IMG/VR virus record: IMGVR_UViG_3300018004_000004
Span: 62,001 to 126,000 of that record
Reading direction: 5' to 3' (one strand)
DNA: 64,000 bases
In this document: in pieces, positions 10,272-64,000 of the stretch
How positions within the stretch are numbered: position 1 is the first letter of the stretch
Layout of the letters: each line of letters opens with the position of its first letter
Notes under the pieces: model-generated
Told to the model about the DNA's origin: nothing
Seen by the model: the letters and a program-made list of their open reading frames with translations, nothing else
Database searches by the model: none
Translations under genes and position numbers: made by a program

Positions 10272-10272
10272 A

Positions 10273-12485: not shown

Positions 12486-12502
12486 ATCTGTATAAGACTC
12501 GG

Positions 12503-48400: not shown

Positions 48401-50237
48401 GGCTAAGGGACTTTTTGATGTAATCCTCGGGGTTGAGATGAAGCTTGTCGACGTAGACGTTCTTACGCGACTCCATCTTCAGCCGGCGGAACTTCTCGTG
48501 AAGGATAATATCACCTTCACCCAACCCACCCAAGCCACGGCCGGCTTCTAGATAGCCCTTCTCGCCGAGCTTACCACTGATCTTACCCCAAGCAGCCTCT
48601 GCCTGGGCGCGTGTCATCTTTGGATTGTCGGCCAGTATGCGTTGGATAGCAGTCTCTTTATAGCCAGCCAATCCTTCTGCTGTTTTCGGCAAGTCGCCGA
48701 ACAGCGACTTCTGTTGTGGCGACACACCAGCCACGGACATCTGTATTTCCGGAACACCTCCGATGGATTCAACCGCGGAAGTTGTAAAGCTTGGACGGAA
48801 CTCCTCACCAATGGTCTCAGCTTTCAGCTGCAAGTCCTTGGTGAAGGATCTATAGAAATACGTTTGCTTAGCGAGCGAAGGCGCACCTCCCGGGATGTAG
48901 AGTTCCGATTCAGCGAACTCGAACACACCTTTCGATGTGCCTCCCTCAGAACCAATGCGAGTCATACCACGACCCAGCATCTTGATAGTGTACTGGATCC
49001 GTTCCAGGTCTGACAGATCCTCAAATGCCTTGCCTCCATAAATAGGCAAGCTGCTAGGAATAGCAGCGCGAGAACGGATATACAGAGCTTGTGGAGAAAG
49101 GTTAGCAAGCTGGGATTCAAGACGTGTTTGAAGCTTGAATGGATCTTCGGGGACCACGCCGCCGAAATAAGCAGCACGACCAATATCACCTTTCAGCTTT
49201 CCCCAATCCTGAGTCAGGTGTTCAGCAACGAATGTATCCAGTTCGAATACTCGTTCTGGCGTGTGAATGTGGCGCCCGACTCCAACCTTGCCTTCAATGT
49301 TGACGGATCCTGTCTTGGGATCAAACAGAGGGATATGAAGCTCGCCCTTTGGACCCTTGATGTTGACACCCAGCATACGGCCGACAGTTCCATCTGCCAC
49401 CTGCTCGGCAACGACCGTAGCAGAGGACACCTGTCCCTGACGGATCGCGCGCTGAATAGCATCAGCTACTTCTGGACGCTGACCGTGCAACTGACCATAA
49501 GCTTCCAGCCACTCCATACTAGTAGTCTTACCAGTCATGCTCATCTTGAGTGGATTGGCAAACGGACCGAGATCCTTGAGCTTCTTGGCCCAGCCAAGAC
49601 GGCTACTCAGCTCCTTGACGAAGCGGGGATCAGCTCTATTGGCGTTGACGATACCACGGAGCTCTGACTCTGCCATGCCGGCCAGAGGACCTCCGCGCGC
49701 AACTCTAGTAAGATCTAGCGGAGAAGCTACCCGCTGTCTGGCGCCTTCCACAGCATAGGTAAGCAGATCACGCTTGTTAGACATGCCCAGAAGCTCATGA
49801 AAGAGGTTCTCCGCCTGCTCCATGCTCTTCTCGATCGGTGGCCCACCGCGGTCAACCTGGCTGAAGAAATCTACGGCCGCATTGTCGGCCCAGGTACGGA
49901 AGATGGGATTGAGAGCTCCTGCACCCCCACCTGTCTTTTCCAGAGCTGAACGTAAGTCCTTGAATCTAGTAGCTTTATTGCTACCAAAAAACATAGGCAT
50001 CTCACGTGCGAACTGCATGCCAGCTCGAGCTGTACGGGAGGCAGATGTTACCAAGCCCGGGCCGGCAAGACCCATAGCCGCTACAATAGGGGTAGTTATG
50101 ACGGCAGTCCGGAAGTAACCGCGGTTCTCATCCTTAAGGAAAATAGGGGCCGTAGCCGAGGCAAAGGCAGTGGCAAAGGCCACACCTGGATGTTCAGTTG
50201 CAAGGCTTTTAACGGCTTTTAGGAACCCGGTAAACAT
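45468..50237 (-). CDS. candidate single-chain two-barrel (DPBB) virion RNA polymerase at the tape-measure position
   Basis: Beta-like GAKIDIAGVKG, then beta'-like ARHP...GLFGADDDKDILNL (DxDxD); hydrophobic termini. Confidence 0.72.
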   Translation of the reverse strand: MFTGFLKAVKSLATEHPGVAFATAFASATAPIFLKDENRGYFRTAVITTPIVAAMGLAGPGLVTSASRTARAGMQFAREMPMFFGSNKATRFKDLRSALEKTGGGAGALNPIFRTWADNAAVDFFSQVDRGGPPIEKSMEQAENLFHELLGMSNKRDLLTYAVEGARQRVASPLDLTRVARGGPLAGMAESELRGIVNANRADPRFVKELSSRLGWAKKLKDLGPFANPLKMSMTGKTTSMEWLEAYGQLHGQRPEVADAIQRAIRQGQVSSATVVAEQVADGTVGRMLGVNIKGPKGELHIPLFDPKTGSVNIEGKVGVGRHIHTPERVFELDTFVAEHLTQDWGKLKGDIGRAAYFGGVVPEDPFKLQTRLESQLANLSPQALYIRSRAAIPSSLPIYGGKAFEDLSDLERIQYTIKMLGRGMTRIGSEGGTSKGVFEFAESELYIPGGAPSLAKQTYFYRSFTKDLQLKAETIGEEFRPSFTTSAVESIGGVPEIQMSVAGVSPQQKSLFGDLPKTAEGLAGYKETAIQRILADNPKMTRAQAEAAWGKISGKLGEKGYLEAGRGLGGLGEGDIILHEKFRRLKMESRKNVYVDKLHLNPEDYIKKSLSPETLIGFEGLNPVTSEAPSTFIEGWSTTPSGQFELKLRQEYPVETGAKIDIAGVKGLAIVPEEDIFRRQVELLNLYGEATGSKTAIPSFVEALAPLHYMQAKTSDPFRLMVSQAAAVSSDIAANSVHLKADWANLEALDRVNKYMADLAAQGIRAQRTGTGNNVFHLLEDSEYVRSLDLEGRRLRMQSVGQLTEDYLRDVAGFAQRGAPGTEGELFSAFRRSGEESLMNYMQKNAMFSFAAFWDSTRRNVPQMVGATYDMFSEMWRAGNVEGMKELMSRLDFHGGDPGRASAFAAQFVGGDFTKSLGTVIPIEEAAANLRIGTMEGRVGGIFDPSNKLVQENFSIKLDQPVYARVAGRDLEVTHIPVLGKLAHGGGSNLYEKVGEGLTYSPTDYEKTLADVVKWQKDPVMMSAAISAHLDEAQRVLFGKEGFYRARGTDVLGAVSGFIQTRAQENPFELLINEQMAGRVRDPEIRKALLAGEDIYATAARHPIQSAPYMRVKVAPDAGMGPNMVGMDERIRGLFGADDDKDILNLFFYRKGSQAEREAQAAINALNSNQWRSLKTLEMLYGSVEDSRNIAEAGVKTLPSMLEESLKLASAGGRAEQVTQRMAGGVVGAYSNLLTRLYMNVEMHPTIGVKPMERDILGHMLWTIRQVPISAQKGKMKLNPEDPLGLYRRLVGGLESRTPEGVAKFTEGMREVISGYGKESIITAETAPLFEELTGMRVAPGTKRNVLMDVLDSEKFQGTLSEFIIGRNVRADRAAELLTKATTDMEGDSLYRLQALYKEMGTPPPWLIGLAREKGSGMSVSKVLGAINEGLKSTYRESKGNLGVLAIGVGAAAVGAVLTSHVKKVTPTQATFGRPRGNFRPETTETVTDQVPGEPITGAMSSVNPPRRQLPLRGGTSTTIVAPMRQRTDLEVRMKAQNRQDTIEMQRMISQISGNNGVSNINVNYRNGWRNKMSTLRRRETIREQLES

Positions 50238-50274
50238 ATTCGGCTTATCTCACTGATTTAATGGCTCTAATCGA

Positions 50275-50306
50275 CTCCTAGGGCCCTTTACGGGGCATTC
50301 TAGGAG
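50275..50306. other. intergenic hairpin between the two giant genes
   Basis: CTCCTAG/CTAGGAG with inner GCCCT/GGGGC. Confidence 0.45.
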
Positions 50307-50307
50307 C

Positions 50308-53300
50308 TTAGCTGGTGCTCTCTTCCCGGTACTCGTCCTCATTCCGGCGAATATCCCGCATAACCTCTTTGTCTCCCTGTTCGTCGACGCTTATAGACAC
50401 GTTGGAGCCTGCCACTCGGTTAGGACCGCCCGAGGAGACCACTTGCGGATTCTTATCTTGTCCCTCGAGGATAATACGCTCCACAGTTTGTCGTATGCGT
50501 TCTGTAGGTTGTGAACCGCTAGAAACAAGTTCTCGCACAGCTCCATCGATGTAGGGCTTGCGCCAGAGGAGGGCTGCCCGGTCGTCGTAGATGTTGAAGT
50601 CGTGGTAATCATAGCCTTCGTTCTGAATAATCTTAAGCTTGACATCCTCATAGTCAATGCCTTGCTCCCATAGCGGAGAACCAGGACCGGGGATATCAAA
50701 GCCGAGCTTGCCAAAGGTTTCGGCGATTTGCTTCGAACGGATGTAGTCTGCGTAGCTGAGGTCTGTTTTCGCTTGCTCATACTCTTTGAGGCCTTCCTCT
50801 GTGTAGAGGACTCCGCCTTCTTCAATGGCTGGTATTATCTTGCCCGCGAGGCGAGCAAGCATAGCATCAGTTTTTACCCACTGAGCAGTAAGGGCTCGGG
50901 CTAGTTCCGGAGAGACAGATTCAAGAATCTGCTGGCGCTTGTCCGGATCTGTTTCTTGGAGGAATGCTGGGAAGTAAAGCTTCTCGCGCCGAGGGAGGGT
51001 TTGAGAGACAAACTGAGGATTGCCAAAGAGATTGGCACCAATATTCGTTCTCTTACCCTGACTAGTATACCTGCCTTTCTGGCCTGGATGCGCTCCTGCC
51101 TGCACATCTGCACGCAGATATTCCAACTCATCGACCAAGCTATCCATTAGACGGCGATGTTCGACTTCTTCCGGCACCAATACACCGCCAGTGAAACGAC
51201 GGTAGGTACCGCGGGCCCATGCAGCAATCATATCATGGAACGGCTTCTGCCATCTACGCATGCGCGCGCCGTAGACTTCCTGTTCCTGATAGAGAGACAA
51301 AGCTGTGCGCTCATTCCAGTACTTTGTGTGGAATGGAGTTGGTACGAAGCGGAGAGGTCCACCCTCACCTGTGAAGGCCAGAGTCTCGGCGTACTTACCG
51401 AGAGCTACCTGGGTGGAGGAATACATGGCCTGAGCTTCTGCCCCGCCGTAATCCTTTCTGAACTGTCCGAGACCTCGATCGATGATTTCTTTGTTGATAT
51501 TAACATCATCAATGAAGATGACAGCACGAGACTCAGCCGCATGCTCTTCAGTACCCTTAGGCACAACAAGAGTAGCCTGCATGCCAACCTGGCTAGACAA
51601 GTAATCATCCAGAGAAGCTTGTTTCTCCGTAACGGCCTTAGCACTCTGAGAGCGAGTAAGTTCATTCTCCTCGCCGAGTGTTGTAGCTGAGAGATCGGAA
51701 GCAGACATACCAAGAGAACTGAATATGAACTTGCGTCCTGGATACTGCTCCAGCTCAATACCTTCTGGTGTAGCCTTGGTGATCGTTCCTTGGATCTGTT
51801 CGATCGAAGCAGTGAAACGACGCTGACCGAACTGGATCGTCGATTCCTTCATCTGGCGCACTTGATCTTCAGTGCGTGCAAACTCGATCTCCAGACGAGC
51901 ATCTCTCTGTGCGGCCGCGCGCACCTTGGAGCGATAGATCATGTACTCCTTACTCCAAGGAGCAACATCAGCCAGAATCTTGTAACGATAGATGTCTGGG
52001 TATTCTTCTGCCTTCAAGCCACGAAGCTCTGGATGCAGAGCAGCATAACCACGGCCTGGAAGACGAGCACCACCTTCCGGTATCTTGGCGAACGGATCGC
52101 CAGTACGGAAGTTGATCATGTAATCTTCGCCAGGCAGCCAACGAGGCATTGTATTCGGGATCTCATTAGCTTGCGGAGCTAGCTTATCAGGCTGAATGAA
52201 ACGGCGGAGAGGTTCTGAATAACCGAACGGCATGCCACCAGTTCCGCTAGGGTTGAAGCCAGACACAGCACCCAACTCACGCTGGTAGTACTGACGGGAC
52301 AGATTCGTCATTTGACGACTGCCCTGCAATACAACATCTTGACCCGGTGTTCCGGCGCCAGGAGTTCCAGCCTTACCATAAAGGGTTGTAGCTATGAACC
52401 CAGGCAGACCTGTATATTCAGCAAAGGCCAGCGCTTCACGACCGACAACATCCTTGAAGCCAAACTCCTCACGAGGCCGAGATGGCGCCAGGCCACCCAA
52501 CGCCATGTTAGGTTCTAGACGCGGGCTATACAACGTATAGTTGTTGATGTCCCATTCGCCTTGGTGCATTCTCTGTGTTGGCTTTACGATGCGGCCGACT
52601 GTGGCAGCCAGCAGCGGACCAATGAGAGGCACGTTGGAGAAAGCAGGAGATGTGATTGGGTATGGACGGCTAGCGTAGTTCGCGCGTTCCAGCCAGTATG
52701 GATCCTTTATGTACTTGAACGGATGCAGCAGTGGGTGATGTTCCCAGTATGCATCTTCCGAACCATAGGTCGATACCATCTCGGCCTTGGTCTTCATCAA
52801 CTGATACCAGTGCGGACGGAAGTACTTGATGCGACCGCCACTGAACGGAGTGGAACCTACATCCCACCAACGGCCGGCGCGGATTGGAACTTCTTCTTCA
52901 CCAGAGTAGATGCGTTGCAGCTCATCTTCAGTCTTACGGCTGCCCAACATACCAGGCACGAAAGGCAGAGCCAGCAAAGCACCGATACCTGCACCCTTCC
53001 AGAAGGCCTTGTGAGAAGCAGCTACTCGAGCAGCGTGGACTGGGAACTCTTGGGCGCCACGAGCAATGTTGACCCAGTGAATACCTGCACCAATAGCACC
53101 AGCTCCGATAGGCAGAGCTAACGGACCATACTGCGGACCTGGTACGATCTCTTCGTACTTATCTGTGATCGCACGGAGGCCTGGGATTGCGTCGGTTGCG
53201 CGCGCCCAGGCAAGATGAGCCTTAAGCGGAACCTCGGCGAGCGTCTCAGCTGGTTTATTTCCCAGCTGGTAGTTGATGTAACGTGCGGCCGTGATAGCAA

Positions 53301-55233
53301 GATATGCAGGCAGCACACGCTTGAGCATCAGCGCATTGAGCATTCCGCCTTCGCCGGCGAACGGAATGTGGAACAGTTTGTTGTATGAGCCCTTAGGCAG
53401 ACCCATACCGATATCAGACAACAGACGGAGTGGGCGCTCAGCAGCTTCGAATGCTACACGTTGACCTGTTCTGTAGGCCGATTCGATACCACCCACGAGT
53501 CCAGGCTGACGACCGTAGAGAGGTTCGAAGAACTGGAACTCTCCACCAATCTGTCTCTTGAAAGCCTGTCCCTTTGTGAGGGGAGTTCCTGGTCTCTGGC
53601 TGGCGCGGAGATTCTGGAACATCTCCCACATCTCAGCAAGAGGACCTTTGTCAGTCAGTGTACGAGGGAATACCTGTTCGCGGAGCTTGGCGCCAAAGGC
53701 AGCCGATGATCCTGTCAGCCGGCCGCGTTCGGCAAAGCGAATAGCTTCACCGCGGCCGCCAACCAAACTCAGATACGGAGAGGAAGCTGAGGTTCGAGTG
53801 AACCTCATTCCTGTCTTAGCAAAGCGTTCATCCAGGGCGCTGACACCAATCAGGCGCTCGATGTGCTTACCCATCTCGGTAAGCTCAGAACCGCGTATCA
53901 GTTGTTCGGCCGCAAAGGAAACTTCCTCTGGCAGATAACTGGACATGCGCTGAGACAGACCGAAGGTACGGAAGAGGCCGCCAGGCGAACGCGCTTCTAC
54001 CGTCTTCATGAACTGATAGACGCCCTCAGCATAGCCAGACCAGTTCTTAAGAGCAAACTTATGTGCTCCTACAACTGCGGCGCCACCAGCCAACCAGGCA
54101 GCTACCTTCAGAGTATTGCGATCGTCCTGTCCATCCCAACCGGATCCAAAATCAGTCAAGGCATGACGGCTCTCAGCAGCCAGACCTGTACCACTCAAAC
54201 CGGTGATCTGAGTCTGACGATCGCTTCTCTTGCTGCTTGCGATAGCCCACGCTGCGGTTGCCGCGGCAGCAAAGACCAGGGCAACAGAGATACCCTTTCC
54301 TATGGCACTGACTTTGTTAGGCAGGACCTTGGCACCACGCTCAGCCTGAGCAGCTACCTTCTCAGCCCAGGGGCTGGCATAGATCTTGGAGAAGAACGTC
54401 TCGGCAGTCTCACCTGGGGGCAAGAGTTGTGCAGAGCCCAGAGCTTCTTCCCAACTGTGCCCACGCTGTAGGTTTCTCTTGGCTGTGCGCAGGCGCTCAA
54501 AGAGGGTCTGCTCGACCTTGACGTCAGTCACAGCCTCATGATAGCCGGCAGCTCCAGCCAGCTTGGGACCCATGAGTCTTTCAAGTCCGCCGGCCGCACC
54601 AGCAATATTCTCAACCTTCCAGCCAGGAACCCACTGCATCTCCTCTACGTTACGCGCCAGCATACCTGGGCCGGTAGTCTTGGAGATAGGAGTGGATGGG
54701 CCCATGCGCAGGTGACGTTCTGCGAAAGCTGGGTTGTCTTGTCCGTAACCCAGCGCCAGTTCAAAGAATGACTGCTCCAAGCCGAATACCTTTACTCCCT
54801 TGCGCTTGAAGAAGTCCTTGTATCCAGCGAGGCTGGGATAACGGCCGGCGATCTCAGTGAGCACACCAGTATCGTACTTGACATTCCAGCCAGTCAGTAG
54901 GAAACGCTTCTTACGAGAGAGTTCTTCTTCGGCCGAGGCAAAGAAGCGTCGAGCTGCTTCTTCTTCACCGACCTGACCAAGCTTCATAGCCTGAGAAAGA
55001 ACTTGCTCGCCTTTCGCATAGTTGTACGCAAACGGGATATGAATCCCGCTCACAGGATCGGTATATCCAGTGCGAGGCTTTACTAATGTGGTGGGATGAA
55101 ACGGGGATGCTACGTAAGGAGGGAGTTTTGAAGCGAAGATCTGGAGCAGGCCTGTGTTCTTATGTCCAGCGGACAGGCCTGTAGTCTCGACGTCGAGAAC
55201 ATGAAAGAAATGCTTTTGATGCCAGGTTGCCAT
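50308..55233 (-). CDS. tape-measure-like protein with N-terminal DEDDh 3'-5' exonuclease and a degenerate SNase-like domain
   Basis: LDVETTGL, GWNVKYD, YHEAVTDV; several Gly/Ala hydrophobic segments; RAVIFIDDVNINKEIIDRGLG. Confidence 0.78.
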   Translation of the reverse strand: MATWHQKHFFHVLDVETTGLSAGHKNTGLLQIFASKLPPYVASPFHPTTLVKPRTGYTDPVSGIHIPFAYNYAKGEQVLSQAMKLGQVGEEEAARRFFASAEEELSRKKRFLLTGWNVKYDTGVLTEIAGRYPSLAGYKDFFKRKGVKVFGLEQSFFELALGYGQDNPAFAERHLRMGPSTPISKTTGPGMLARNVEEMQWVPGWKVENIAGAAGGLERLMGPKLAGAAGYHEAVTDVKVEQTLFERLRTAKRNLQRGHSWEEALGSAQLLPPGETAETFFSKIYASPWAEKVAAQAERGAKVLPNKVSAIGKGISVALVFAAAATAAWAIASSKRSDRQTQITGLSGTGLAAESRHALTDFGSGWDGQDDRNTLKVAAWLAGGAAVVGAHKFALKNWSGYAEGVYQFMKTVEARSPGGLFRTFGLSQRMSSYLPEEVSFAAEQLIRGSELTEMGKHIERLIGVSALDERFAKTGMRFTRTSASSPYLSLVGGRGEAIRFAERGRLTGSSAAFGAKLREQVFPRTLTDKGPLAEMWEMFQNLRASQRPGTPLTKGQAFKRQIGGEFQFFEPLYGRQPGLVGGIESAYRTGQRVAFEAAERPLRLLSDIGMGLPKGSYNKLFHIPFAGEGGMLNALMLKRVLPAYLAITAARYINYQLGNKPAETLAEVPLKAHLAWARATDAIPGLRAITDKYEEIVPGPQYGPLALPIGAGAIGAGIHWVNIARGAQEFPVHAARVAASHKAFWKGAGIGALLALPFVPGMLGSRKTEDELQRIYSGEEEVPIRAGRWWDVGSTPFSGGRIKYFRPHWYQLMKTKAEMVSTYGSEDAYWEHHPLLHPFKYIKDPYWLERANYASRPYPITSPAFSNVPLIGPLLAATVGRIVKPTQRMHQGEWDINNYTLYSPRLEPNMALGGLAPSRPREEFGFKDVVGREALAFAEYTGLPGFIATTLYGKAGTPGAGTPGQDVVLQGSRQMTNLSRQYYQRELGAVSGFNPSGTGGMPFGYSEPLRRFIQPDKLAPQANEIPNTMPRWLPGEDYMINFRTGDPFAKIPEGGARLPGRGYAALHPELRGLKAEEYPDIYRYKILADVAPWSKEYMIYRSKVRAAAQRDARLEIEFARTEDQVRQMKESTIQFGQRRFTASIEQIQGTITKATPEGIELEQYPGRKFIFSSLGMSASDLSATTLGEENELTRSQSAKAVTEKQASLDDYLSSQVGMQATLVVPKGTEEHAAESRAVIFIDDVNINKEIIDRGLGQFRKDYGGAEAQAMYSSTQVALGKYAETLAFTGEGGPLRFVPTPFHTKYWNERTALSLYQEQEVYGARMRRWQKPFHDMIAAWARGTYRRFTGGVLVPEEVEHRRLMDSLVDELEYLRADVQAGAHPGQKGRYTSQGKRTNIGANLFGNPQFVSQTLPRREKLYFPAFLQETDPDKRQQILESVSPELARALTAQWVKTDAMLARLAGKIIPAIEEGGVLYTEEGLKEYEQAKTDLSYADYIRSKQIAETFGKLGFDIPGPGSPLWEQGIDYEDVKLKIIQNEGYDYHDFNIYDDRAALLWRKPYIDGAVRELVSSGSQPTERIRQTVERIILEGQDKNPQVVSSGGPNRVAGSNVSISVDEQGDKEVMRDIRRNEDEYREESTS

Positions 55234-55238
55234 GCATA

Positions 55239-55559
55239 TTACACACTGAAGCTCTTACCACAGCCACACTGGCTGCGCACATGTGGATTAGTAAACCTAA
55301 ATCCAGATGCGTCTAGGCCTTCGATGTAGTCTACAGATACATCCTCAAGATACATCAAGCTCATTGGGTCCACGACTACTTTCACGGGACCAAACTCAAA
55401 CAGTTCCCAGTCCGGCTCGTATTCATCAACGAGACCGATAGAGTATTCGAATCCGGAGCAGCCGCCACCTTTCACACCAAGGCGGACGAACGGCCGATCT
55501 GGGTTATCTTTGAGGACGCTGACGAGCTTGTCCTGGGCGGCGATTGAAAGCTGGATCAT
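55239..55559 (-). CDS. iscA: A-type Fe-S cluster carrier protein (IscA/SufA/ErpA, HesB family)
   Basis: RLGVKGGGCSGFEY, VVDPMSLMYL, GFRFTNP...CGCGKSF. Confidence 0.95.
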   Translation of the reverse strand: MIQLSIAAQDKLVSVLKDNPDRPFVRLGVKGGGCSGFEYSIGLVDEYEPDWELFEFGPVKVVVDPMSLMYLEDVSVDYIEGLDASGFRFTNPHVRSQCGCGKSFSV

Positions 55560-56070
55560 TCCTTCTCTCCAATGCTATTTGCTGCGCATCTGTGAGCTGC
55601 TTTTTCTTTCGTTGTAACTTGCTCTTAGAATCCTTGACAGACTTAGGATCCATCGGGTTGAGTGGCACGCCCGACACAAACTCAGCTTGGGCCAAGCGAG
55701 TAAGGAGTGTTTCCGAATCCCAGCCATCCATCACCTCGAAGGGGATCTTGAATACAGATGCTATGAAGGCCTGTGCGCACAACAGATAAGAGTCTGTTAC
55801 CTTCTTGCGCGCGTTCTCCAGCGGTAGAGACAGCGTCTGGAAAGATCCAGAGAACGGGCTCTTCTCAAGCTGGTCCTTGTAAATCCACATCATGATCCCG
55901 GCCGGAATCTCTTCCGGCCGCGGACCGTGGACGACACACAACTTATAGACGTGTAGGGCTACTTCAGCGGGAGGCCCTTGACGAGAACGGGCATCTCGGT
56001 ACTCTCCCCAAGTAAGATCACGCCAGACTACACGTGTCCCACTGGGCCAAGTGGCGGCCCTAGTTGTCAT
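55504..56070 (-). CDS. putative tail assembly chaperone
   Basis: Between the tube genes and the tape-measure locus; WRDLTWGEY motif. Confidence 0.6.
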   Translation of the reverse strand: MTTRAATWPSGTRVVWRDLTWGEYRDARSRQGPPAEVALHVYKLCVVHGPRPEEIPAGIMMWIYKDQLEKSPFSGSFQTLSLPLENARKKVTDSYLLCAQAFIASVFKIPFEVMDGWDSETLLTRLAQAEFVSGVPLNPMDPKSVKDSKSKLQRKKKQLTDAQQIALERRNDPAFNRRPGQARQRPQR

Positions 56071-56073
56071 AGA

Positions 56074-56553
56074 TTACAGCTCGGCTGAAAGGAACTCGAT
56101 CTGCTGTGGATCCATGAAATCCGACAGCTTCGTTACCTTCGTGAAGAGGGTGGCCGGGAGGCCAGCAGTGCCATTGCGCAACCGAACGTCGGTCAGCTTA
56201 CCATTCTCGCCGGCATTGGTCCAGACAACAGCCTTGATAACGGCGTGGAGTTGCATTTCGAGTTCAGCATCCGCCACTGGAGTTGCCATGTTTTGGATCT
56301 GCTTTTGGATTGTGGTCAGCTCTAGACCGGTCAGTCCGCGGACAATGTAAGCACGCTTACCGTCGGGAGTAAAGAGTTCGAGTCTGTTGTTAGGGGCTTG
56401 CTGCTTCCATGCAGCAATCTGATCCTTCGTCGGAGCCCCAGGCAGGGATGCTAGGAACTCGTGTGGATCCATATTGGAACGGTCTACAGGCTTGGTTTCG
56501 CCTGGAGTACCAGTACCTTGTACTTCTACTTCTGCTTCCGGATTGTGTGTCAT
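56074..56553 (-). CDS. putative tail assembly chaperone
   Basis: AGGAG RBS; IAAWKQQ...YIVRGLT..E...AGLPATL...V..LSDF; operon position. Confidence 0.65.
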   Translation of the reverse strand: MTHNPEAEVEVQGTGTPGETKPVDRSNMDPHEFLASLPGAPTKDQIAAWKQQAPNNRLELFTPDGKRAYIVRGLTGLELTTIQKQIQNMATPVADAELEMQLHAVIKAVVWTNAGENGKLTDVRLRNGTAGLPATLFTKVTKLSDFMDPQQIEFLSAEL

Positions 56554-56742: not shown

Positions 56743-56824
56743 AGACTCGCTTGACCTCTCTGTACATTCCGCGGGCCACTACAATAACCGCCACAACGCA
56801 GAATATGATGTTACCCCAATGCAT
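56702..56824 (-). CDS. small membrane peptide (40 aa)
   Basis: TAATG-coupled; MHWGNIIFCVVAVIVVARGMYREVKR. Confidence 0.55.
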   Translation of the reverse strand: MHWGNIIFCVVAVIVVARGMYREVKRVYGNHGRCDTEEGQ

Positions 56825-58158
56825 TATCTGAGTCTCCGCGCGATGAACCCATAGGAATCCAGAATGGTCTGGCCATCCTGGGCCATCACTTGATCATTCG
56901 AAATCAGCTTGCACTTCTCCAGGTAGCGAATACGCTTCACTCCTGTAATCTCATTACCCAGCTCGATACGGATGTCAAACAGAACATCCTGGTAGACAGC
57001 ATTGTCGAACCCAATCACACTAGAGAACGTAGTATTCTGCTGCGTGATGTTGGTTGCCAGTGTCTGCATCTGCTCCGGAGTCAGGCCAGCTCGTAGAGTG
57101 TTGATTTGAATCTGCAGATTGGCAGCCTGCTTGGCCGACCCTGTATCGTTCGGGTTGTTGTTTGCCTGCTGATTAAGATTATCACGAGCAGCCATGAGTC
57201 CCAAAATACGTGTGATGGTTGCTGCAGCCGGGCTATTCACCAAAGCCTGGGTGTTTTGGGTGTTCTGGATGAATCTCTGGTACTCCTGCATGACGGTATA
57301 TAGATAGCCTTCCGTCACGAAGTTGATAGTGAACTGACCTTGAACCAGGGATCTACCCTGGGCGTAGGCATCCACATAGCGGCTGGCATAGCCATAGATA
57401 GGAACCGCGTTATCCTGGAGAGCGTACTGGACGGAGTTCAACTCATCGATGAAGATATTCCCAATATACATGCGCGCGCCGGTGACCGTGAAGTACTTAT
57501 CATACTCCGAGTTGGGATAGGTATACTCAGACGGCGCCGGAGGAACAGTGGAGGTACTGCTTACGATGCTGGAAGGCGAAGATGTACTCTGGGAAGAGTC
57601 AGTCGGGTTACCGGTCTGTTGACCGTTATTGGCATCAGCCAGCTGAACCAAGGTAATCACATACGGATCAGTCTGGGTGGTAACTACCAGAGACTGACTG
57701 TAGGGCGAATAGCCTTGTAGCGTGGCGGCAAGGGTGTATGTACCAAGCGGAATGGGATTCAGAGTGGTAGAGGTACCTGAGTTGTCGGTTACACCATTGT
57801 CGGTGGCCGGCCCTGAAATGCCCCACGCAATACCAGGCACGGCAGGCTTGAATGAGAGAGTGATATTGGTCGTCGGCTGGGCACTAGGCGACAACGAAAC
57901 CTGTACCGACTGAGAGACTGTTGTGTTAACTGAAAGCAGCTGGCTAAGAGCTTGATATCCAGTAGCCTTTACCTGCATCTGAGCCTGGATAGGATTCAAC
58001 AATACTCGGAACGATACACGCCCATTCGAATCAGTCACCACCGAGAACTGTGTTGGATCGAAGTTCGCCGATCCATTGATAAACACCTGTGCCCCAGAGA
58101 TAGGAGCATTAGTTGCCCCATCGATAACGGTTAGTACTATTGGGCTGTAAGTAGCCAT
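56824..58158 (-). CDS. tail-tube-family paralogue with N-terminal carboxypeptidase-regulatory-like/PEGA domains
   Basis: VIDGATNAPISGAQV, GTYTLAATLQGY; then PIYGYAS...AQGRSLVQGQFTINF and YGFIAR. Confidence 0.75.
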   Translation of the reverse strand: MATYSPIVLTVIDGATNAPISGAQVFINGSANFDPTQFSVVTDSNGRVSFRVLLNPIQAQMQVKATGYQALSQLLSVNTTVSQSVQVSLSPSAQPTTNITLSFKPAVPGIAWGISGPATDNGVTDNSGTSTTLNPIPLGTYTLAATLQGYSPYSQSLVVTTQTDPYVITLVQLADANNGQQTGNPTDSSQSTSSPSSIVSSTSTVPPAPSEYTYPNSEYDKYFTVTGARMYIGNIFIDELNSVQYALQDNAVPIYGYASRYVDAYAQGRSLVQGQFTINFVTEGYLYTVMQEYQRFIQNTQNTQALVNSPAAATITRILGLMAARDNLNQQANNNPNDTGSAKQAANLQIQINTLRAGLTPEQMQTLATNITQQNTTFSSVIGFDNAVYQDVLFDIRIELGNEITGVKRIRYLEKCKLISNDQVMAQDGQTILDSYGFIARRLR

Positions 58159-59138
58159 TAGGCTGCCACACTCGAGGAGAAGATATTCGAAGGAGGAATA
58201 GCGAACTGCTGTTTGTTGTTCATGACTGCTTCAACAGTATTCTCTGGCGCCACACTCTGACCGGCATTGGTTGGATTGAATAGAGCACTGGCTTCAAAGT
58301 TCAACAGAGGTGTAAAGTCGGAGGCCATATAGCTGACAGTCTGTTCAGCCAGCATGTCATTAGTAGAGTATACCACACCATCGGTCACGAAATCCACGCC
58401 GAGGACACGACGATAGCTGGCATTGCCATACTCATCTGTGAAGAGCATGGTCATGTTGAATGGAGGGAGCTGATCGACCTTGATGTAGAAAGTATCCTTG
58501 GATAGGTCATGGGCTGATAGCTGGTTAGCCATCAAGAATCTGTACAGAACATCGACGGTGAACTGAGTGAGCACCATAGTACCAGCTATGGTACGACGGC
58601 CGCGAGCGAAGCCCTTTGGATTGATGTAGCCGGCCGCGCGCACAGCAGCCTTCTCTCTGTGAATCGAGACAGTGAAAGTAGTACATTCAATCAACTGCTT
58701 CTGGTTCTTGCGGACCGAACTGACTGTATCTGTATTGACCAGATCCACTATGATCTTCAGGTCCGTGCCTGTGTAGGTCGAGAAATCATTCTGTAGGCCC
58801 ACAGTGAGTGTTCCGTCTGGATTGTAGATGGAGAGACCTGTGCCTCCATTAGGATTGGCAACCAAGTCATTTAGACTATACGGAACTGTACCAGTCCCTA
58901 TTGGAATACCAATCGATGTCGCAAACGGATTACCTACAGTGGGGATCGATCCACCTGTTTGGTTGGTGATATCGCTTACGGAAGGTATCGCATTACCCTG
59001 AATCGTTGTAGGAGTGGAATCGTACGGGCCTGGTTGTTTCTCAGTAATAGGAAACAGACCAGACGAAAGAAGAGACGTCTGGTCGCCGTTAACTGGAGAA
59101 AAACCAACTGTAACTACACTGAGGGAGGGAATGGACAT
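58158..59138 (-). CDS. tail-tube-family paralogue
   Basis: SIHREKAAVRAAG..NPKGFARGRRTIAGTMV and DQLPPFNMT match 59229-59927. Confidence 0.78.
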   Translation of the reverse strand: MSIPSLSVVTVGFSPVNGDQTSLLSSGLFPITEKQPGPYDSTPTTIQGNAIPSVSDITNQTGGSIPTVGNPFATSIGIPIGTGTVPYSLNDLVANPNGGTGLSIYNPDGTLTVGLQNDFSTYTGTDLKIIVDLVNTDTVSSVRKNQKQLIECTTFTVSIHREKAAVRAAGYINPKGFARGRRTIAGTMVLTQFTVDVLYRFLMANQLSAHDLSKDTFYIKVDQLPPFNMTMLFTDEYGNASYRRVLGVDFVTDGVVYSTNDMLAEQTVSYMASDFTPLLNFEASALFNPTNAGQSVAPENTVEAVMNNKQQFAIPPSNIFSSSVAA

Positions 59139-59156
59139 AGGAGGGAGGGATCAAGC

Positions 59157-59190
59157 AAAAAGGGCTGCCACTGAGTTCAGCAGCAGCCCC
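59157..59190 (-). terminator. intrinsic terminator after the major tube gene
   Basis: On the - strand GGGGCTGCTGCTG-AACT-CAGTGGCAGCCC-TTTTT. Confidence 0.85.
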
Positions 59191-59228
59191 TGGATAGAGC
59201 ACTAGCTTCGAAAGAGACTTCTTAAAGA

Positions 59229-59927
59229 TTAGCTGCCACCTTCACCAGAAAGATTCGGGAAGGCAGTTACCACAGCAGACCAAGGTTCAACGAGACGAGC
59301 AACCCATGTTGCCTGCATCTCGGTCACCGCGTCATCGATGCTGACTCCCATACCTTCATTTAGGATCTCAACACCGAAGATCTTCATCGTAGTGGCGGCT
59401 CCGATTTCATTCGTACCGGCCAGAGTGATGTCAAAGGGAAGGATTTGATCCGAGTACCATGGTACAGCTTCCTGCTTGAAGCCCGAGACCGCGTTGACCG
59501 GCACTTCGGCCGAATCAACAGTCGTCGGGAGCGGGATGGGGACTGCACGTGTCAGAGACGAGGAGAAGATCGCTGTCTGCGAGAGCTGCTGTTGGGCAGC
59601 TGGGTTGTATTCCGGACGAACGTCATCGATGTTGGCTACGAATACACCAGATGCTTCATAGATGATGTTCAACAGAGCATGACGATCGAAGTTGATCCAG
59701 ACCAAGGAGCCAGCAACGCCGCGCTTGTTACGGCTAAAGGCACGAGGGTCGGGAGATCCCATCGTGTAGATAGGCGCCTTCTCGCGAGTAACGCTGTAGC
59801 TGATCGCCTGGATCTCGGCGAACGGGATGTTGCCGATCTGGGCACGGATGTCCGAGCCTGAGAACGAGTTGTAGGAACGAGCGATTTCGCTTTCGAGCGA
59901 GTTACCGCCATTTGTATTAATAGCCAT
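59229..59927 (-). CDS. tail tube protein
   Basis: Directly after the sheath and followed by a terminator; SFSGSDI, ISYSVTREKAPIYTMG, DQILPFDIT, GVEILNEG.G.SIDD. Confidence 0.82.
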   Translation of the reverse strand: MAINTNGGNSLESEIARSYNSFSGSDIRAQIGNIPFAEIQAISYSVTREKAPIYTMGSPDPRAFSRNKRGVAGSLVWINFDRHALLNIIYEASGVFVANIDDVRPEYNPAAQQQLSQTAIFSSSLTRAVPIPLPTTVDSAEVPVNAVSGFKQEAVPWYSDQILPFDITLAGTNEIGAATTMKIFGVEILNEGMGVSIDDAVTEMQATWVARLVEPWSAVVTAFPNLSGEGGS

Positions 59928-59972
59928 TTGTTTATGACTCCTGGGAGGAGATACTACTGAGGAAGTTTACCC

Positions 59973-59997
59973 GGGGCCAACCACGAGAGTCAGCCCC
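59973..59997 (-). other. hairpin between the sheath and tube genes
   Basis: GGGGCTGAC/GTTGGCCCC on the - strand. Confidence 0.45.
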
Positions 59998-60017
59998 AGA
60001 TTAAACCGTTGATACTA

Positions 60018-62483
60018 TTAGCCGTTCAGGTTAATACCGATTGTGGCATTCAACTGAACCAGCTCATTTGCAGGAACGAAGCTGATCTGGATTGAAGCCT
60101 GACCAATCTTCTGCTGAGCTGGAGTGGATGTGATCGTGAAGTTGTAGCTCGAGAGATAACCGCGCTTCTGGAGGTTCAAGCAGTCGGCGTCAAGAGCAGT
60201 CTTCAAGGCCACCAAGGACAAACCATCGTTGGTTCCGTTGCCAATGTAGTTGTTGGCCTCTCCCAGAACTGTCTGGATGACCAAGAACTTGATGCGCTGA
60301 CGGAGAGCCAGAGTATAATCGCTTGCCACTGTTGCCGCGGTCTTGTCGATCAAGGCAACCGGCAGAACACCCACACCCTTGTAACGAAGCATGTTGATGT
60401 CTGCGAATGTGAGAGCATCGAGCTGGTTGAGGCTTGCACGATAGAGCTGCTGTGCACCCGCAACTGGCTTGTTGGTAACTGCCTTCTGCTGGTCGAGCGT
60501 GCTGACCAAGCCGGCGATGATACCAGCAATGTTGCCGACGTAAGTGCCGTAGCCGTTCGACAGGAGAGCGTAATCACCCTGTGGACAGAGATAAGCACCC
60601 ATATCAACCTTGTAGCCGTTGCTGTCGATTTCCGGGCCACCATCGTACTCACCCGAGTCTGTATCAAACAGACCAGGCAGACGGTAACCATTACTCCAGT
60701 CGGCGCATGCCGAGTTCAACGAGCTGGCGCTGCAGCCAACCAACCAAGGAGTACCCAGCAAACCGCCACCTGACGTTGCCGGATTACCTGTGACCGGGTT
60801 ATAGGTCGGCAGATAGCCGATCCATGCCTTCACAGCCGGGAGCGAGAAGTTGCTCAAGCTTGCGGGACCACCAAAGCCGATGAAGCCGAGGCAGCCGCCA
60901 TTGTCAGCCTGAGGAGCTTCGCTCTGATTGAAGCAGAAGCGCGCGAGCTGATAAGCGAAGTTGACTTCGTGGAATCCGGACTGTTGGACTGTTCCACCAG
61001 CGCCGACACCAGATGCCAAACGAGTAGCAGCAGTGGAGAAGCTGAACACAACAGGAGTCGTCGGAGAAACCTGACCCTGAAGCAGAGCAGAAGCCAGCTG
61101 CTGGTTGTTGGAGTTGTAGAAGTGAGCATCCGAGGCCCACTGATAAATAGGATTGCCGGAGGCGTCAACACCAGTCCACAACCAGTCAAGAGCGTTGGGG
61201 TTCGTAACTGGATTGTTGATGGCTGTCGAGGCGCCTGTATAGAACGCAACGTTCGGGTTGTCACCGAGAGCGCCAGGAGTGATTGCTTCATCGATCGGGA
61301 AGCCCTGGAGCAGGTTGATTGCATTCTGTTGTGCGATGTACAGCTGGCGGCCAGTGAGACCGATACCTGTGATTGGCGCGACGTATACTGCACCACCACC
61401 GATGTTCTGGATCTCAACAGCATTTGCCAAACTGTCTGTACCAGTACCGATTGCGGTACCAGCAATAGCAGAACCTGTAACCTGGGAATCACCAGTGTTC
61501 AGGATTGCGGAGCTGCCTGTCACGGCCGGGTCGTTAGACCAGACCACCTGGTTATCAAGCCACAGAGAGAGCAAGCCGTTCTTGTACCACACGCTGTAAC
61601 GCGAGTTGGCATCTGCTTCGACCTGGCCCAAAGTGATGAGTAAGCCAGGATATGCAGCAACCGGCTGCTGGCCGTAAGCTGGAGTTGCAGACAGAGTACC
61701 TGCTGTAAGAGTGTAAGGACCGCCCACTGTGAAAGGACCAGCAGCAGTCAATACGATATCGTGTGTACCAATGCTCAGAACTTCGTACACTCCGTCCAAA
61801 GCAGACGAAGGAGAACCAAGACCAGCATCAGTCAAACCTGCCAGTGTAACCTGGGCGCCGACCACAACACCCGCAGTAGGAGAACCAGAATAATGCAGAT
61901 CAACTGTCGTTGCAGTCAATGCTTGAACTGTCTGGAAGTTAGCAAACGTATCTGCGATCGCCGTTGGAGTTTCAATAGCGTGATCAGGCGAACCAATCTG
62001 GTCCACCAGGATTGTGTTGCCAACGACCTGTGAAATCGGCTGTGCTGCGATATTGTAACCGGCGAAGGAGAAACCTGTTACTGTAAGAGGAGCCCCATCA
62101 ACCAGGTCAGCAGTCGGAGGAAATGCAGTTGTGTAGGTGATAACACCATCAGACAGAACTGCGCTAATGATGGCATTGTTCGGACCAAAACCGGATCCAG
62201 AAGTTCCAACCAGAAGAGTGCCCTGAGCAGTACCGACGCGCATCAGGTAAACATTGTCGCAGTATACGGCCGCTTCAGACATCCCGCGGATTAGCGTACC
62301 TTGCAGCCCGAAAAGAGTGGTTGCTGTAGCAACGCTTACAACCTGATAAGGGCTGTTTGCGGGTCCAGTCGCGGAGGTACCAAGGACCATGATGGATTGA
62401 TTTGTTGGGGTGTTAACGGCGGCCAGACCACCGTCTACGGTCTGTACCTGGACACCCGGCAGATTTGCAAAAGTGAAGGACAT
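60018..62483 (-). CDS. contractile tail sheath protein
   Basis: N-terminal LPGVQVQTVDGG...VLGTSATGPANSPY; C-terminal QLDALT...N.YIG...SFVPANELVQL. Confidence 0.9.
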   Translation of the reverse strand: MSFTFANLPGVQVQTVDGGLAAVNTPTNQSIMVLGTSATGPANSPYQVVSVATATTLFGLQGTLIRGMSEAAVYCDNVYLMRVGTAQGTLLVGTSGSGFGPNNAIISAVLSDGVITYTTAFPPTADLVDGAPLTVTGFSFAGYNIAAQPISQVVGNTILVDQIGSPDHAIETPTAIADTFANFQTVQALTATTVDLHYSGSPTAGVVVGAQVTLAGLTDAGLGSPSSALDGVYEVLSIGTHDIVLTAAGPFTVGGPYTLTAGTLSATPAYGQQPVAAYPGLLITLGQVEADANSRYSVWYKNGLLSLWLDNQVVWSNDPAVTGSSAILNTGDSQVTGSAIAGTAIGTGTDSLANAVEIQNIGGGAVYVAPITGIGLTGRQLYIAQQNAINLLQGFPIDEAITPGALGDNPNVAFYTGASTAINNPVTNPNALDWLWTGVDASGNPIYQWASDAHFYNSNNQQLASALLQGQVSPTTPVVFSFSTAATRLASGVGAGGTVQQSGFHEVNFAYQLARFCFNQSEAPQADNGGCLGFIGFGGPASLSNFSLPAVKAWIGYLPTYNPVTGNPATSGGGLLGTPWLVGCSASSLNSACADWSNGYRLPGLFDTDSGEYDGGPEIDSNGYKVDMGAYLCPQGDYALLSNGYGTYVGNIAGIIAGLVSTLDQQKAVTNKPVAGAQQLYRASLNQLDALTFADINMLRYKGVGVLPVALIDKTAATVASDYTLALRQRIKFLVIQTVLGEANNYIGNGTNDGLSLVALKTALDADCLNLQKRGYLSSYNFTITSTPAQQKIGQASIQISFVPANELVQLNATIGINLNG

Positions 62484-63240: not shown

Positions 63241-63876
63241 TTAAACAGTGACCTTCTCACAGCCTAGCTCAAAGAACTCTATGCGGCCGTTGTCTCCGTG
63301 GTGTGCTGTAAGGGTACGTATCCGCCATTCCTCAGTCCTAATCATGGCCGGATCCATCTGCCCATCCGGACCGACTTTAAGCTCGAAAAGCTTATCAGGC
63401 GCCGGGCGGGTAGGAATCGAGTAGCGTTCATAGTCCGGGACGTCGTACCAGAACATGAACGCCAGGCATCTATCGGAGTCCTGGACGCCTATAGGAGAGA
63501 TCTGACCATGCTGCTGAATCTGAGTGGCGCTGCCCAAAACCGAGCCAAAGTTCTTGGCGAAATAGACTGTCTTGATCTCCTCGGTAAAAAGGTAACCCTC
63601 ACCATTGCAGTAGACACAGTTAGGGTCCGGAGAACCATTCTGAACACCAAAAGATAGATAGCACTGGCACTTAGTGTTAGAGAGCTTGCGATAGATCGCC
63701 GGCCGGCCAACACCAGGATCCTCAAAATCACCATTCATAGTACGCGCGAACCACTCACGAAGATCGAATGCAGTCATCTCCGGATAGGCAGTATCCTCGA
63801 ATGAGCCCGAGACGGGTCTATTAGGATTCTGTTGATTGTAGCTCGGCAGACCTTTATTGATGATGATCTGTGACAT
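63241..63876 (-). CDS. putative head-closure/neck protein
   Basis: CQC......P...CVYCNGEGY Zn motif, as in neck proteins of large myophages; ATG 63876 follows the upstream stop. Confidence 0.65.
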   Translation of the reverse strand: MSQIIINKGLPSYNQQNPNRPVSGSFEDTAYPEMTAFDLREWFARTMNGDFEDPGVGRPAIYRKLSNTKCQCYLSFGVQNGSPDPNCVYCNGEGYLFTEEIKTVYFAKNFGSVLGSATQIQQHGQISPIGVQDSDRCLAFMFWYDVPDYERYSIPTRPAPDKLFELKVGPDGQMDPAMIRTEEWRIRTLTAHHGDNGRIEFFELGCEKVTV

Positions 63877-63878
63877 GG

Positions 63879-64000
63879 TTATCCATTGCCTACAAGTGTC
63901 AAGCAAATATCTGCAAGTGTAGTATCCGGTGTGACTGGGCCGTCTATTTCTAGTAGATCAGTAGCAAGAAAAGACGAATCTGAAGCCTGTGTAAACGTCG
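63879..64000 (-). CDS. 3' end of a virion protein sharing the C-terminal domain of 20031-21251
   Basis: TFTQASDSSFLATDLLEIDGPVTPDTTLADICLTLVGNG* vs VFTQASNQAFAPGDLLEIDGPATPDTTLADVGIVLWGYRTS*. Confidence 0.8.
   Translation of the reverse strand, partial: TFTQASDSSFLATDLLEIDGPVTPDTTLADICLTLVGNG

What the first reader, a model, noticed from the sequence alone, without database searches (positions are those of the whole stretch)
55239..55559. Fe-S carrier gene iscA embedded in the tail-assembly module
Seen: an intact A-type carrier (CSG...CGC) overlapping the upstream chaperone-like gene by 56 nt and ending 5 nt before the exonuclease-TMP gene. Established: phage iscA-like genes are usually regarded as auxiliary metabolic genes. 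Inference: tight coupling to late tail genes hints that a virion component (tail tip or one of the ejected enzymes) needs an Fe-S cluster or iron. The lambda tail-tip protein gpL is a precedent for Fe-S in tails. Cys-cluster candidates here include 38917-39576 and 63241-63876.
Basis: partly seen in the sequence, partly recalled or inferred. Interest (0 to 1): 0.6.

Follow-up and report, generated by a model that had tools for sequence, protein, structure and literature searches.

The report
Fe-S carrier gene in tail operon
A group of giant peat-soil phages carries an intact bacterial-type iron-sulfur carrier gene wedged at one fixed spot inside their tail-assembly operon, but nothing found so far shows that the tail itself needs it.

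Summary
Window 55239-55559 (- strand) encodes an intact 106-aa A-type Fe-S carrier (ATC). It overlaps the upstream tail-chaperone gene by 56 nt and stops 5 nt before a 1641-aa gene.

The window lies in a 215-kb jumbo myophage distantly related to Bacillus phage 0305phi8-36. Its gene order is sheath, tube, tube paralogue, p444, two chaperones, ATC, gp145-like giant protein, tape measure candidate, hub, spike.

The ATC sits in exactly this slot, with a 5-nt stop-start gap, in all 10 ATC-bearing lineages examined. All three ligand Cys are invariant and dN/dS is 0.11-0.22. The phage copies form one clade.

It is absent from every relative whose tube protein is 72% identical or less, including three complete genomes, and from 0305phi8-36 and ME3.

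The tail-client idea is not confirmed:
- Both flanking giant proteins contain no cysteine.
- The two Cys candidates have invariant Cys4 sites. One is a gpV-like spike and the other has a CxxCxGxG zinc-finger motif.
- Both sites predate the ATC and persist in ATC-less complete genomes.

The genome also encodes radical SAM enzymes, which are rival clients. The most likely reading is a late-expressed auxiliary carrier riding in the tail operon. A dedicated tail metallochaperone remains possible at about 0.2.

The parts
55239..55559 (-). A-type Fe-S carrier (ATC) gene, 106 aa, with C34, C98 and C100
   Evidence: The Cys triad and the GGGCSG and CGCG motifs are invariant. dN/dS is 0.11-0.22.
55560..55570 (-). 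Shine-Dalgarno-like GGAGAGAAGGA directly before the ATC start codon. An in-frame stop lies 18 nt upstream at 55575-55577.
   Evidence: No slippery heptamer was found, so a G/GT-type frameshift fusion is unlikely.
55504..55559 (-). 56-nt overlap between the end of the chaperone gene and the start of the ATC gene
   Evidence: In relatives the gene calls show overlaps of 4 to 56 nt.
55234..55238 (-). 5-nt spacer (TATGC) between the ATC stop codon and the start of the next gene. The likely mechanism is termination-reinitiation coupling.
   Evidence: The length is identical, and the sequence is (T/C/G)ATG(C/A), in all 9 lineages with DNA in hand.
55504..56070 (-). Second tail assembly chaperone (188 aa), at the position of 0305phi8-36 gp144
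   Evidence: PMC2147016 describes a two-gene G/GT-like chaperonin.
56074..56553 (-). First tail assembly chaperone (159 aa), at the position of gp143
50308..55233 (-). 1641-aa Cys-free giant protein, homologue of the 0305phi8-36 gp145 virion protein. It has an N-terminal DEDDh exonuclease domain (about aa 1-260, 54454-55233) followed by hydrophobic segments.
45468..50237 (-). 1589-aa Cys-free protein, the tape measure candidate by position (equivalent to gp146)
39613..45468 (-). 1951-aa baseplate hub with a cell-wall lysin region (equivalent to gp147)
   Evidence: The relative in L098 carries an SLT domain.
38917..39576 (-). 219-aa gpV-like central spike candidate with four invariant Cys (C35, C38, C56, C140). 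It is the best in-operon candidate for a metal site.
63241..63906 (-). 221-aa virion protein (probable true start at 63876) with C80, C82, C97 and C100 conserved in 55 of 55 homologues in a separate survey; C82 is Ala in the L004 homologue. It carries a CxxCxGEG motif, probably zinc-binding.
56824..62483 (-). Upstream tail genes: sheath (60018-62483), tube (59229-59927), tube paralogue (58158-59138) and p444 (56824-58158)

Best explanation
The gene encodes a working A-type Fe-S carrier.

Origin (shown): the ancestor of one subclade of 0305phi8-36-like jumbo myophages, found in peat, wetland and soil metagenomes, captured it once from a bacterium. It landed at the junction between the second tail chaperone gene and the gp145-like giant virion protein gene, and it has stayed there under purifying selection.

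Expression (inferred from anatomy): there is no promoter-like or strong terminator-like site next to it. It is translated from its own ribosome-binding site inside the end of the chaperone gene, and it probably hands ribosomes to the next gene across a fixed 5-nt gap. It would therefore be made late, together with tail-assembly proteins.

Mechanism (inferred from family knowledge): the phage has no scaffold or desulfurase. The carrier must take [2Fe-2S] or [4Fe-4S] clusters built on the host ISC/SUF machinery and pass them to apo-proteins. This would add terminal carrier capacity when host synthesis is shutting down.

Clients: not identified. Candidates are the phage's radical SAM enzymes and the Cys4 central spike.

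My judgement: this is an auxiliary carrier riding in the tail operon, not a dedicated tail metallochaperone.
For: Family identity and ligands.

Selection: dN/dS is 0.11-0.22, similar to the neighbouring genes.

Single origin: 25 phage rows form one clade with SH-aLRT 95.

Fixed slot: the same position and the same 5-nt gap occur in 10 lineages with ATC identity down to 56%.

No nearby control signals: no promoter-like site within about 1.9 kb and only three weak 5-6-bp hairpins within about 1.2 kb. The gene has its own SD and an in-frame stop 18 nt upstream.

Lone carrier: the genome has no NifU_N and no Aminotran_5.

The ATC is dispensable for the conserved tail Cys4 proteins:
- Complete relatives G001, G003 and G004 have no ATC.
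- They keep the spike and the zinc-finger protein. All four Cys of each were checked in G001 and in several other ATC-less contigs.
- Both adjacent giant proteins have zero Cys.

Fe-S enzyme clients exist in the genome: one clear radical SAM gene (76 bits), one borderline (28.6-30.4 bits against a 29.5 cut-off), one weaker hit and a further CX3CX2C ORF without a Pfam hit. The three CX3CX2C genes at 187.7-193.7 kb have no homologue in the ATC-less relatives.

The literature already links viral ATC genes with genomes rich in radical SAM genes (PMC5332604).
Against: - Among the other viral contigs carrying ATC genes, the commonest identifiable neighbours are IscU, ferredoxin and nucleotide-metabolism genes. 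Here the gene is alone and locked between tail genes, which a generic auxiliary role does not explain.
- Late co-expression fits enzymes needed early or mid infection poorly.
- The allele was swapped in one close relative while the slot was kept.
- An invariant Cys4 spike lies in the same gene string.
- I could not show that the radical SAM genes co-occur with the ATC in other ATC-bearing genomes (inconclusive).
- ATC-less relatives also have radical SAM genes.
- There is no expression data.
Confidence: 0.5

Rival explanations
1. Dedicated tail metallochaperone. The carrier is made alongside tail proteins because it inserts an Fe-S cluster, or iron, into a virion component. The most plausible target is the Cys4 gpV-like central spike at 38917-39576. 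This would be analogous to the [4Fe-4S] in lambda gpL, or to the iron-loaded P2 gpV spike.
For: - The slot inside the tail-assembly operon is strictly conserved, with a fixed 5-nt gap, in all 10 lineages.
- The slot was kept through an allele swap.
- The spike candidate has four Cys that are invariant down to 32% identity.
- Its weak fold matches include many central spikes: P2 gpV, R2 pyocin, phi92, Mu, P1 and phiKZ, at Z 3.9-4.8.
- Precedents exist for metal in tail tips (PMC10721106; PMC5175280).
- Other viral ATC genes sit in quite different contexts.
Against: - The Cys4 spike and the Cys4 zinc-finger protein are older than the ATC. They persist in three complete relatives with no ATC (the four Cys checked).
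- No Cys-cluster protein was seen to be gained in the tail module together with the ATC.
- The two translationally coupled neighbours have zero Cys.
- There is no gpL-family protein.
- A Cys4 site may simply bind zinc.
- Slot conservation is expected from a single insertion into a rigid module.
Confidence: 0.22
2. Exapted assembly factor. The ATC fold has been recruited as a third tail chaperone or a virion/ejected protein that binds the chaperone or the gp145-like protein, independently of cluster transfer.
For: - It sits between the G/GT-like chaperones and the giant virion protein and overlaps the chaperone gene.
- It is expressed in step with them.
Against: - All cluster ligands and ATC signature residues are invariant. 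A purely structural role would not preserve them.
- No frameshift fusion to the chaperone is possible: an in-frame stop lies 18 nt upstream, there is no slippery site, and the ATC's frame relative to the chaperone gene differs between the window (+1) and L006 (-1).
- Relatives assemble the same tail without it.
Confidence: 0.07
3. Mononuclear iron donor or sulfur-flux modulator. The protein buffers or delivers iron, or shifts the balance between host Fe-S synthesis and tRNA 2-thiolation. In lambda that balance tunes the G/GT chaperone ratio.
For: - PMC5175280 cites Maynard 2012 on competition between the Isc pathway and tRNA thiolation, which affects the gpG/gpGT frameshift.
- The gene abuts the chaperone genes.
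- The window also carries tRNA-Lys(UUU), tRNA-Gln(UUG) and tRNA-Glu(UUC).
Against: - This lineage makes its two chaperones from separate genes without a frameshift (the frames differ between relatives).
- An A-type carrier consumes no sulfur from IscS.
- There is no direct evidence.
Confidence: 0.05

Closest known systems
Bacterial A-type carriers (IscA, SufA, ErpA; PF01521, TIGR00049)
   Same: - Full-length single domain with the three ligand cysteines and the GGGCSG and CGCG motifs.
- Clear matches to solved IscA and SufA structures.
- The nearest named cellular relatives are annotated ErpA, from Deltaproteobacteria, Haliangiales and Acidobacteriota MAGs.
   Different: - It falls below every equivalog cut-off (IscA 90 against 151, ErpA 88 against 117, SufA 88 against 136 bits).
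- Identity to any cellular protein is 50% or less.
- It is encoded without scaffold or desulfurase partners and lies inside a phage tail operon.
Viral ATC/IscU auxiliary metabolic genes in marine and other viromes (PMC5332604)
   Same: - A phage-borne A-type carrier in a large myophage genome that also encodes radical SAM enzymes.
- At least 523 IMG/VR stretches carry such genes.
   Different: In 66 non-redundant loci among the 80 best fetched (131 flanking ORFs), the commonest neighbours with a Pfam match are IscU (11), ferredoxin (11), DNA methylase and RNR, and no tail family is among the 25 families listed. None of the 80 loci shares this tail module. Here the gene is wedged, with overlaps, between tail chaperone and virion protein genes.
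Lambda gpL and related tail tip proteins with a [4Fe-4S] cluster
   Same: They are a precedent that a tail tip protein can hold an Fe-S cluster on four Cys (PMC10721106). The spike candidate here has four invariant Cys.
   Different: - No Phage_tail_L homologue exists in the genome.
- The candidate resembles OB-fold gpV-type spikes of myophages, not gpL.
- Lambda encodes no carrier of its own (from my own knowledge).
- The metal at the site here is unknown.
Bacillus phage 0305phi8-36 and Acinetobacter phage ME3 tail modules
   Same: The gene order is the same: sheath, tube, tube paralogue, virion protein, two chaperones, gp145-like protein, TMP, gp27-like hub with lysin, gpV-like protein, gpJ-like protein.
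   Different: - Neither has an ATC anywhere.
- Protein identity is only 24-38% over partial matches.

Membership tests
A-type Fe-S carrier (ATC; PF01521 / TIGR00049) | Full-length profile match above the curated cut-off | tested here: met
   PF01521 scores 66.2 bits against 26.3 and covers profile positions 3-110 of 110. TIGR00049 scores 103.8 against 58.8.
A-type Fe-S carrier (ATC; PF01521 / TIGR00049) | Three conserved ligand cysteines, C-Xn-C-G-C | tested here: met
   C34, C98 and C100 are invariant in 28 aligned sequences.
A-type Fe-S carrier (ATC; PF01521 / TIGR00049) | Binds and transfers an Fe-S cluster | not testable with these tools
   This needs anaerobic reconstitution, UV-vis/EPR and transfer assays.
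IscA, SufA or ErpA as specific orthologues | Score above the NCBIfam equivalog cut-off | tested here: not met
   IscA scores 90.3 against 150.6, ErpA 88.3 against 117 and SufA 87.6 against 136.2.
IscA, SufA or ErpA as specific orthologues | Encoded with ISC or SUF partners (IscU scaffold, cysteine desulfurase) | tested here: not met
   The 215-kb genome has no NifU_N and no Aminotran_5.
Lambda gpL-type Fe-S tail tip protein (as the putative client) | Phage_tail_L homology with four C-terminal Cys | tested here: not met
   PF05100 is absent from the genome. The 219-aa candidate has no Pfam hit, and its weak fold matches are OB-fold spikes.
Lambda G/GT-type frameshifted tail chaperone (ATC as the 'T' extension) | Overlapping ORFs joined by a slippery site, with the downstream frame open across the shift site | tested here: not met
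   The ATC frame is closed 18 nt upstream of its ATG and there is no X XXY YYZ heptamer. The gene calls show overlaps of 4 to 56 nt, and the ATC's frame relative to the chaperone gene differs between the window and L006.
Phage moron | Own promoter and terminator flanking the inserted gene | tested here: not met
   No promoter-like site within about 1.9 kb and only weak 5-6-bp hairpins within about 1.2 kb; the gene overlaps one neighbour and abuts the other. The scan is only a sigma-70 consensus scan.
gpV-type central spike (for 38917-39576) | OB-fold N-terminal domain, encoded directly after the hub gene | tested here: inconclusive
   The position matches 0305phi8-36 orf148. The AF2 model has pLDDT 65, and VIA Z is only 3.9-4.8, although spikes are prominent among the top rows.

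The most novel reading that the evidence does not exclude
The carrier is a phage-encoded metallochaperone dedicated to virion assembly. It would load an Fe-S cluster, or iron, onto the Cys4 central spike or another tail protein. That would explain why it is locked into the tail-chaperone slot. It would be the first virus-encoded cofactor-insertion factor for a structural protein, and it would show Fe-S in a myophage puncturing device.
Probability: 0.2. Interest if true: 0.75.

Novelty: new variant of a known kind. Interest (0 to 1): 0.42.

Why it matters
Viral A-type carrier genes are known, and they are read as auxiliary metabolic genes. What is unusual here is the context. The carrier stands alone, is under purifying selection, overlaps the gene before it and stops 5 nt before the next, and keeps one slot of a tail-assembly operon across a whole subclade of environmental jumbo phages.

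If the carrier serves a virion protein, cofactor insertion would count as part of phage morphogenesis, and the gpL Fe-S story would extend to contractile tails.

If it serves enzymes, it shows that position in a late structural operon is a poor guide to the function of a captured gene.

Either way there is a clean comparative system: close relatives with and without the gene, and a defined Cys4 spike that can be tested for Fe against Zn.

Tried and rejected
- **Frameshift fusion of the ATC to the chaperone (lambda G/GT style).** Rejected. There is an in-frame stop 18 nt upstream, no slippery heptamer, and the frame relation differs between relatives.
- **The two flanking giant proteins as Fe-S clients.** Rejected. 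They have zero Cys, and this holds in relatives too.
- **HxH iron motifs.** None in g1641, the hub or the spike, and one HIH in g1589.
- **The 127-aa Cys-rich ORF at 14605-14988.** It is an HNH-type endonuclease, not an Fe-S candidate.
- **Huge-phage records LR756511 and LR756504.** They carry ATC genes, but by ORF sizes alone the surrounding genes do not resemble this module.
- **Atlas feature search on the 219-aa protein.** Uninformative.
- **Foldseek PDB search on its model.** Only weak OB-fold hits at E of 0.13 or worse.
- **Pfam on pieces of g1641, and phmmer of its N-terminus against the PDB.** Nothing. The exonuclease call rests on motifs and on the fold.
- **Complex prediction of ATC with the 219-aa spike.** The verdict was 'no answer' (score 0.21, below the 0.32 mark). 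It counts neither way.
- **Co-occurrence of the 363-aa radical SAM gene with the ATC in other ATC-bearing genomes.** Inconclusive. No contig of the sizes of those genomes appears in the top 120 of 3236 hits.
- **Gene-gain comparison with ATC-less genomes.** Too coarse. Only 102 of 287 ORFs are shared.
- **RNA evidence.** No RNA run holds the stretch.
- **Records behind the Logan and JGI loci L004, L006 and L008.** They could not be searched as whole records.
- **The gpL paper PMC4061613.** Not held.

Full report
**What is there.** Window 55239-55559 (- strand) is an ATG-initiated ORF of 106 aa.
- It matches Pfam Fe-S_biosyn end to end (66 bits; cut-off 26.3).
- It matches TIGR00049 (104 bits; cut-off 58.8).
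- It matches solved IscA, SufA and HI1723 structures (E down to 1.7e-21).
- It stays below the equivalog cut-offs for IscA, ErpA and SufA, so it is a divergent A-type carrier (ATC).
- C34, C98, C100 and the GGGCSG and CGCG motifs are invariant in 22 phage-clade and 6 cellular homologues.
- The stated geometry is exact. It overlaps the upstream 188-aa ORF by 56 nt, and 5 nt separate its stop from the next start.
- A GGAGAGAAGGA ribosome-binding site precedes the ATG.
- The ATC frame is closed 18 nt upstream and there is no slippery heptamer, so it is made as a free-standing protein.

**Genomic setting.** The window is bases 62001-126000 of a single 215,395-bp virus record that CheckV rates complete.
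- PHROG hits and tblastn against cultured phages place it as a distant relative of Bacillus phage 0305phi8-36 and Acinetobacter phage ME3.
- Read against their annotation and Hardies et al. 2007 (PMC2147016), the - strand gene string is as follows:
  - sheath (60018-62483);
  - tube (59229-59927);
  - tube paralogue (58158-59138);
  - p444;
  - two-gene G/GT-like chaperones (56074-56553 and 55504-56070);
  - ATC;
  - gp145-like virion protein (50308-55233);
  - tape measure candidate (45468-50237);
  - gp27-like hub with lysin (39613-45468);
  - a 219-aa protein at the position of the gpV-like spike (38917-39576);
  - baseplate genes, one of them a baseplate wedge subunit.
- Neither cultured relative has an ATC.
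- No promoter-like site lies within about 1.9 kb of the ATC and only weak 5-6-bp hairpins within about 1.2 kb. The only strong hairpin follows the tube gene.

**Distribution and history.**
- The word search found about 25 ATC clusters at 55-83% identity. Below that there is a drop to 50% or less for cellular proteins.
- In a quick maximum-likelihood tree these 25 rows form one clade (SH-aLRT 95).
- Contexts were recovered for 10 distinct lineages: the window, and the P0023, P0020, P0010, P0024, P0015, P0017 and P0013 types, plus L150 and L183.
- Every one has the chaperone, ATC, giant-protein arrangement. The spacer is 5 nt in all ten by gene coordinates and reads (T/C/G)ATG(C/A) in the nine with DNA in hand.
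- A survey seeded with the tube protein returned 160 loci of the wider lineage.
  - The order from tube to gp145-like gene is kept from 44% to 100% tube identity.
  - The ATC occurs only where tube identity is at least 81%, and it is missing in L182 (84%), where the giant gene starts 7 nt after the chaperone gene.
- Whole-record searches found no PF01521 in three complete or near-complete relatives, G001, G003 and G004.
- So the gene was gained once, inside an already fixed module.
- It is under purifying selection (dN/dS 0.11-0.22).
- In L008 the flanks are 85-98% identical to the window in DNA, but the ATC body falls to 43-73%. This indicates a within-clade allele swap that kept the slot.

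**Testing the tail-client idea.**
- The two genes downstream of the ATC encode 1641 and 1589 aa with no cysteine. Relatives show the same. They cannot hold a Cys-ligated cluster.
  - It has four Cys that are invariant in 22 homologues down to 32% identity.
  - Its AF2 model is of medium quality (pLDDT 65).
  - The VIA-align search gives only weak matches (Z 3.9-4.8), and many of them are central spikes: P2 gpV, R2 pyocin, phi92, Mu, P1 and phiKZ.
- The second candidate, 63241-63906, has C80, C82, C97 and C100 in 55 of 55 homologues. C82 is Ala in the L004 homologue, which was not in that set. Its CxxCxGEG motif suggests a zinc finger.
- Both sites are present in ATC-less contigs, including the complete genome G001.
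- The genome has no gpL-family protein.
- A complex prediction of the ATC with the spike gave no answer.
- There is therefore a credible metal site in the same operon, but nothing ties it to the ATC.

**Rival clients and the usual context.**
- The genome has no IscU and no cysteine desulfurase, so the carrier must depend on the host scaffold.
- It does encode radical SAM genes: one clear (76 bits), one borderline, one weaker hit and a further CX3CX2C ORF without a Pfam hit. It also encodes a Cys-rich UDG-family protein.
- The three CX3CX2C genes at 187.7-193.7 kb have no homologue in the ATC-less relatives. Those relatives do have other radical SAM genes.
- I could not establish co-occurrence in other ATC-bearing genomes.
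- ATC genes are common in IMG/VR, with at least 523 stretches.
  - In 66 non-redundant loci among the 80 best fetched, I scanned the 131 flanking ORFs.
  - The neighbours with a Pfam match are most often IscU (11), ferredoxin (11), DNA methylase, UvdE and RNR.
  - No tail family is among the 25 listed, and none of the 80 loci shares this module.
- Nishimura et al. 2017 describe viral ATC genes in genomes rich in radical SAM genes (PMC5332604).

**Verdict.**
- The gene is a real, selected A-type carrier, gained once and fixed in a tail-operon slot where it overlaps the gene before it and stops 5 nt before the next. No other viral ATC locus examined has this context.
- The inference that a virion protein needs Fe-S is possible, but it lacks specific support. 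The conserved Cys4 tail proteins do without a phage carrier in close relatives, and the coupled neighbours have no Cys.
- I favour a late-expressed auxiliary carrier with unidentified clients (0.5) over a dedicated tail metallochaperone (about 0.2).
- No RNA data exist for this phage. It recurs in peat, wetland and soil metagenomes from at least 18 studies.

Noticed in passing
window 1610-11483 (+): A dense array of 25 predicted tRNA genes (one a 73-nt minus-strand call overlapping two others) plus a tmRNA (11138-11483, tag AEFEELPLAA) lies upstream of the structural module. Several Cys-rich 'ORFs' in this stretch (for example 5113-5619 and 12401-12688) overlap or abut it and are probably not genes.
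   Followed up: partly
window 54454-55233 (-), N-terminus of the 1641-aa protein: This is a DnaQ/RNase T-like DEDDh exonuclease domain. D14, E16, D121 and H232 are invariant, and the Foldseek top hits are all RNase T, REXO2 or PolC exonucleases. It is fused to a giant virion-protein homologue and followed by hydrophobic segments. About the first 380 aa are missing in some relatives (L006, L131 and others).
   Followed up: yes
window 45468-55233 (-): Two consecutive giant proteins (1641 and 1589 aa) contain no cysteine at all. The 1641-aa protein's homologues in relatives have 0-1 Cys. This complete avoidance of Cys may suit proteins that leave the virion.
   Followed up: partly
L008 10045-10326 compared with window 55239-55515: A close relative is 85-98% identical in DNA on both flanks, but only 43-73% inside the ATC gene, which also has a 6-aa insertion. 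This is an allele replacement confined to the gene body.
   Followed up: yes
window 59160-59191 (-): A strong 14-bp GC-rich hairpin followed by a T run lies just after the major tube gene. It may act as an attenuator that sets a high tube to downstream-gene expression ratio.
   Followed up: no
window 14605-14988 (-); L004 15244-15654; L309 5194-5808 and 11847-12242: Homing-endonuclease-like genes (HNH, PDDEXK_5, HNH_2, Endonuclease_7) are inserted at different junctions of the tail module in different relatives. One sits between the two chaperone genes in L309.
   Followed up: no
window 56070-56076 (-): In the window the two chaperone ORFs are in the same frame, separated by a stop and one codon. 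By coordinates, in L006 and L008 they lie in different frames, so this is probably chance and not read-through.
   Followed up: partly
G000 187691-197231 (outside the window): A cluster of three CX3CX2C (radical SAM-like) genes lies next to an RNA ligase and a TPM-phosphatase gene. All three have no homologue in the ATC-less complete relatives. The function is unknown.
   Followed up: partly
window 55234-55238 and the equivalent in 8 relatives: The 5-nt spacer after the ATC stop always contains an out-of-frame ATG, so the sequence reads TAA/TAG, then (T/C/G)ATG(C/A), then ATG. The reason for this conservation is unexplained.
   Followed up: no
L099 (NCBI MAG contig) and the run list: A relative's 52-kb contig is binned in a Candidatus Acidiferrales (Acidobacteriota) MAG. 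IMG/VR flags two relatives as proviruses. The phage recurs in peat metagenomes from 2014 to 2025. Together these hint weakly at an acidobacterial host.
   Followed up: no
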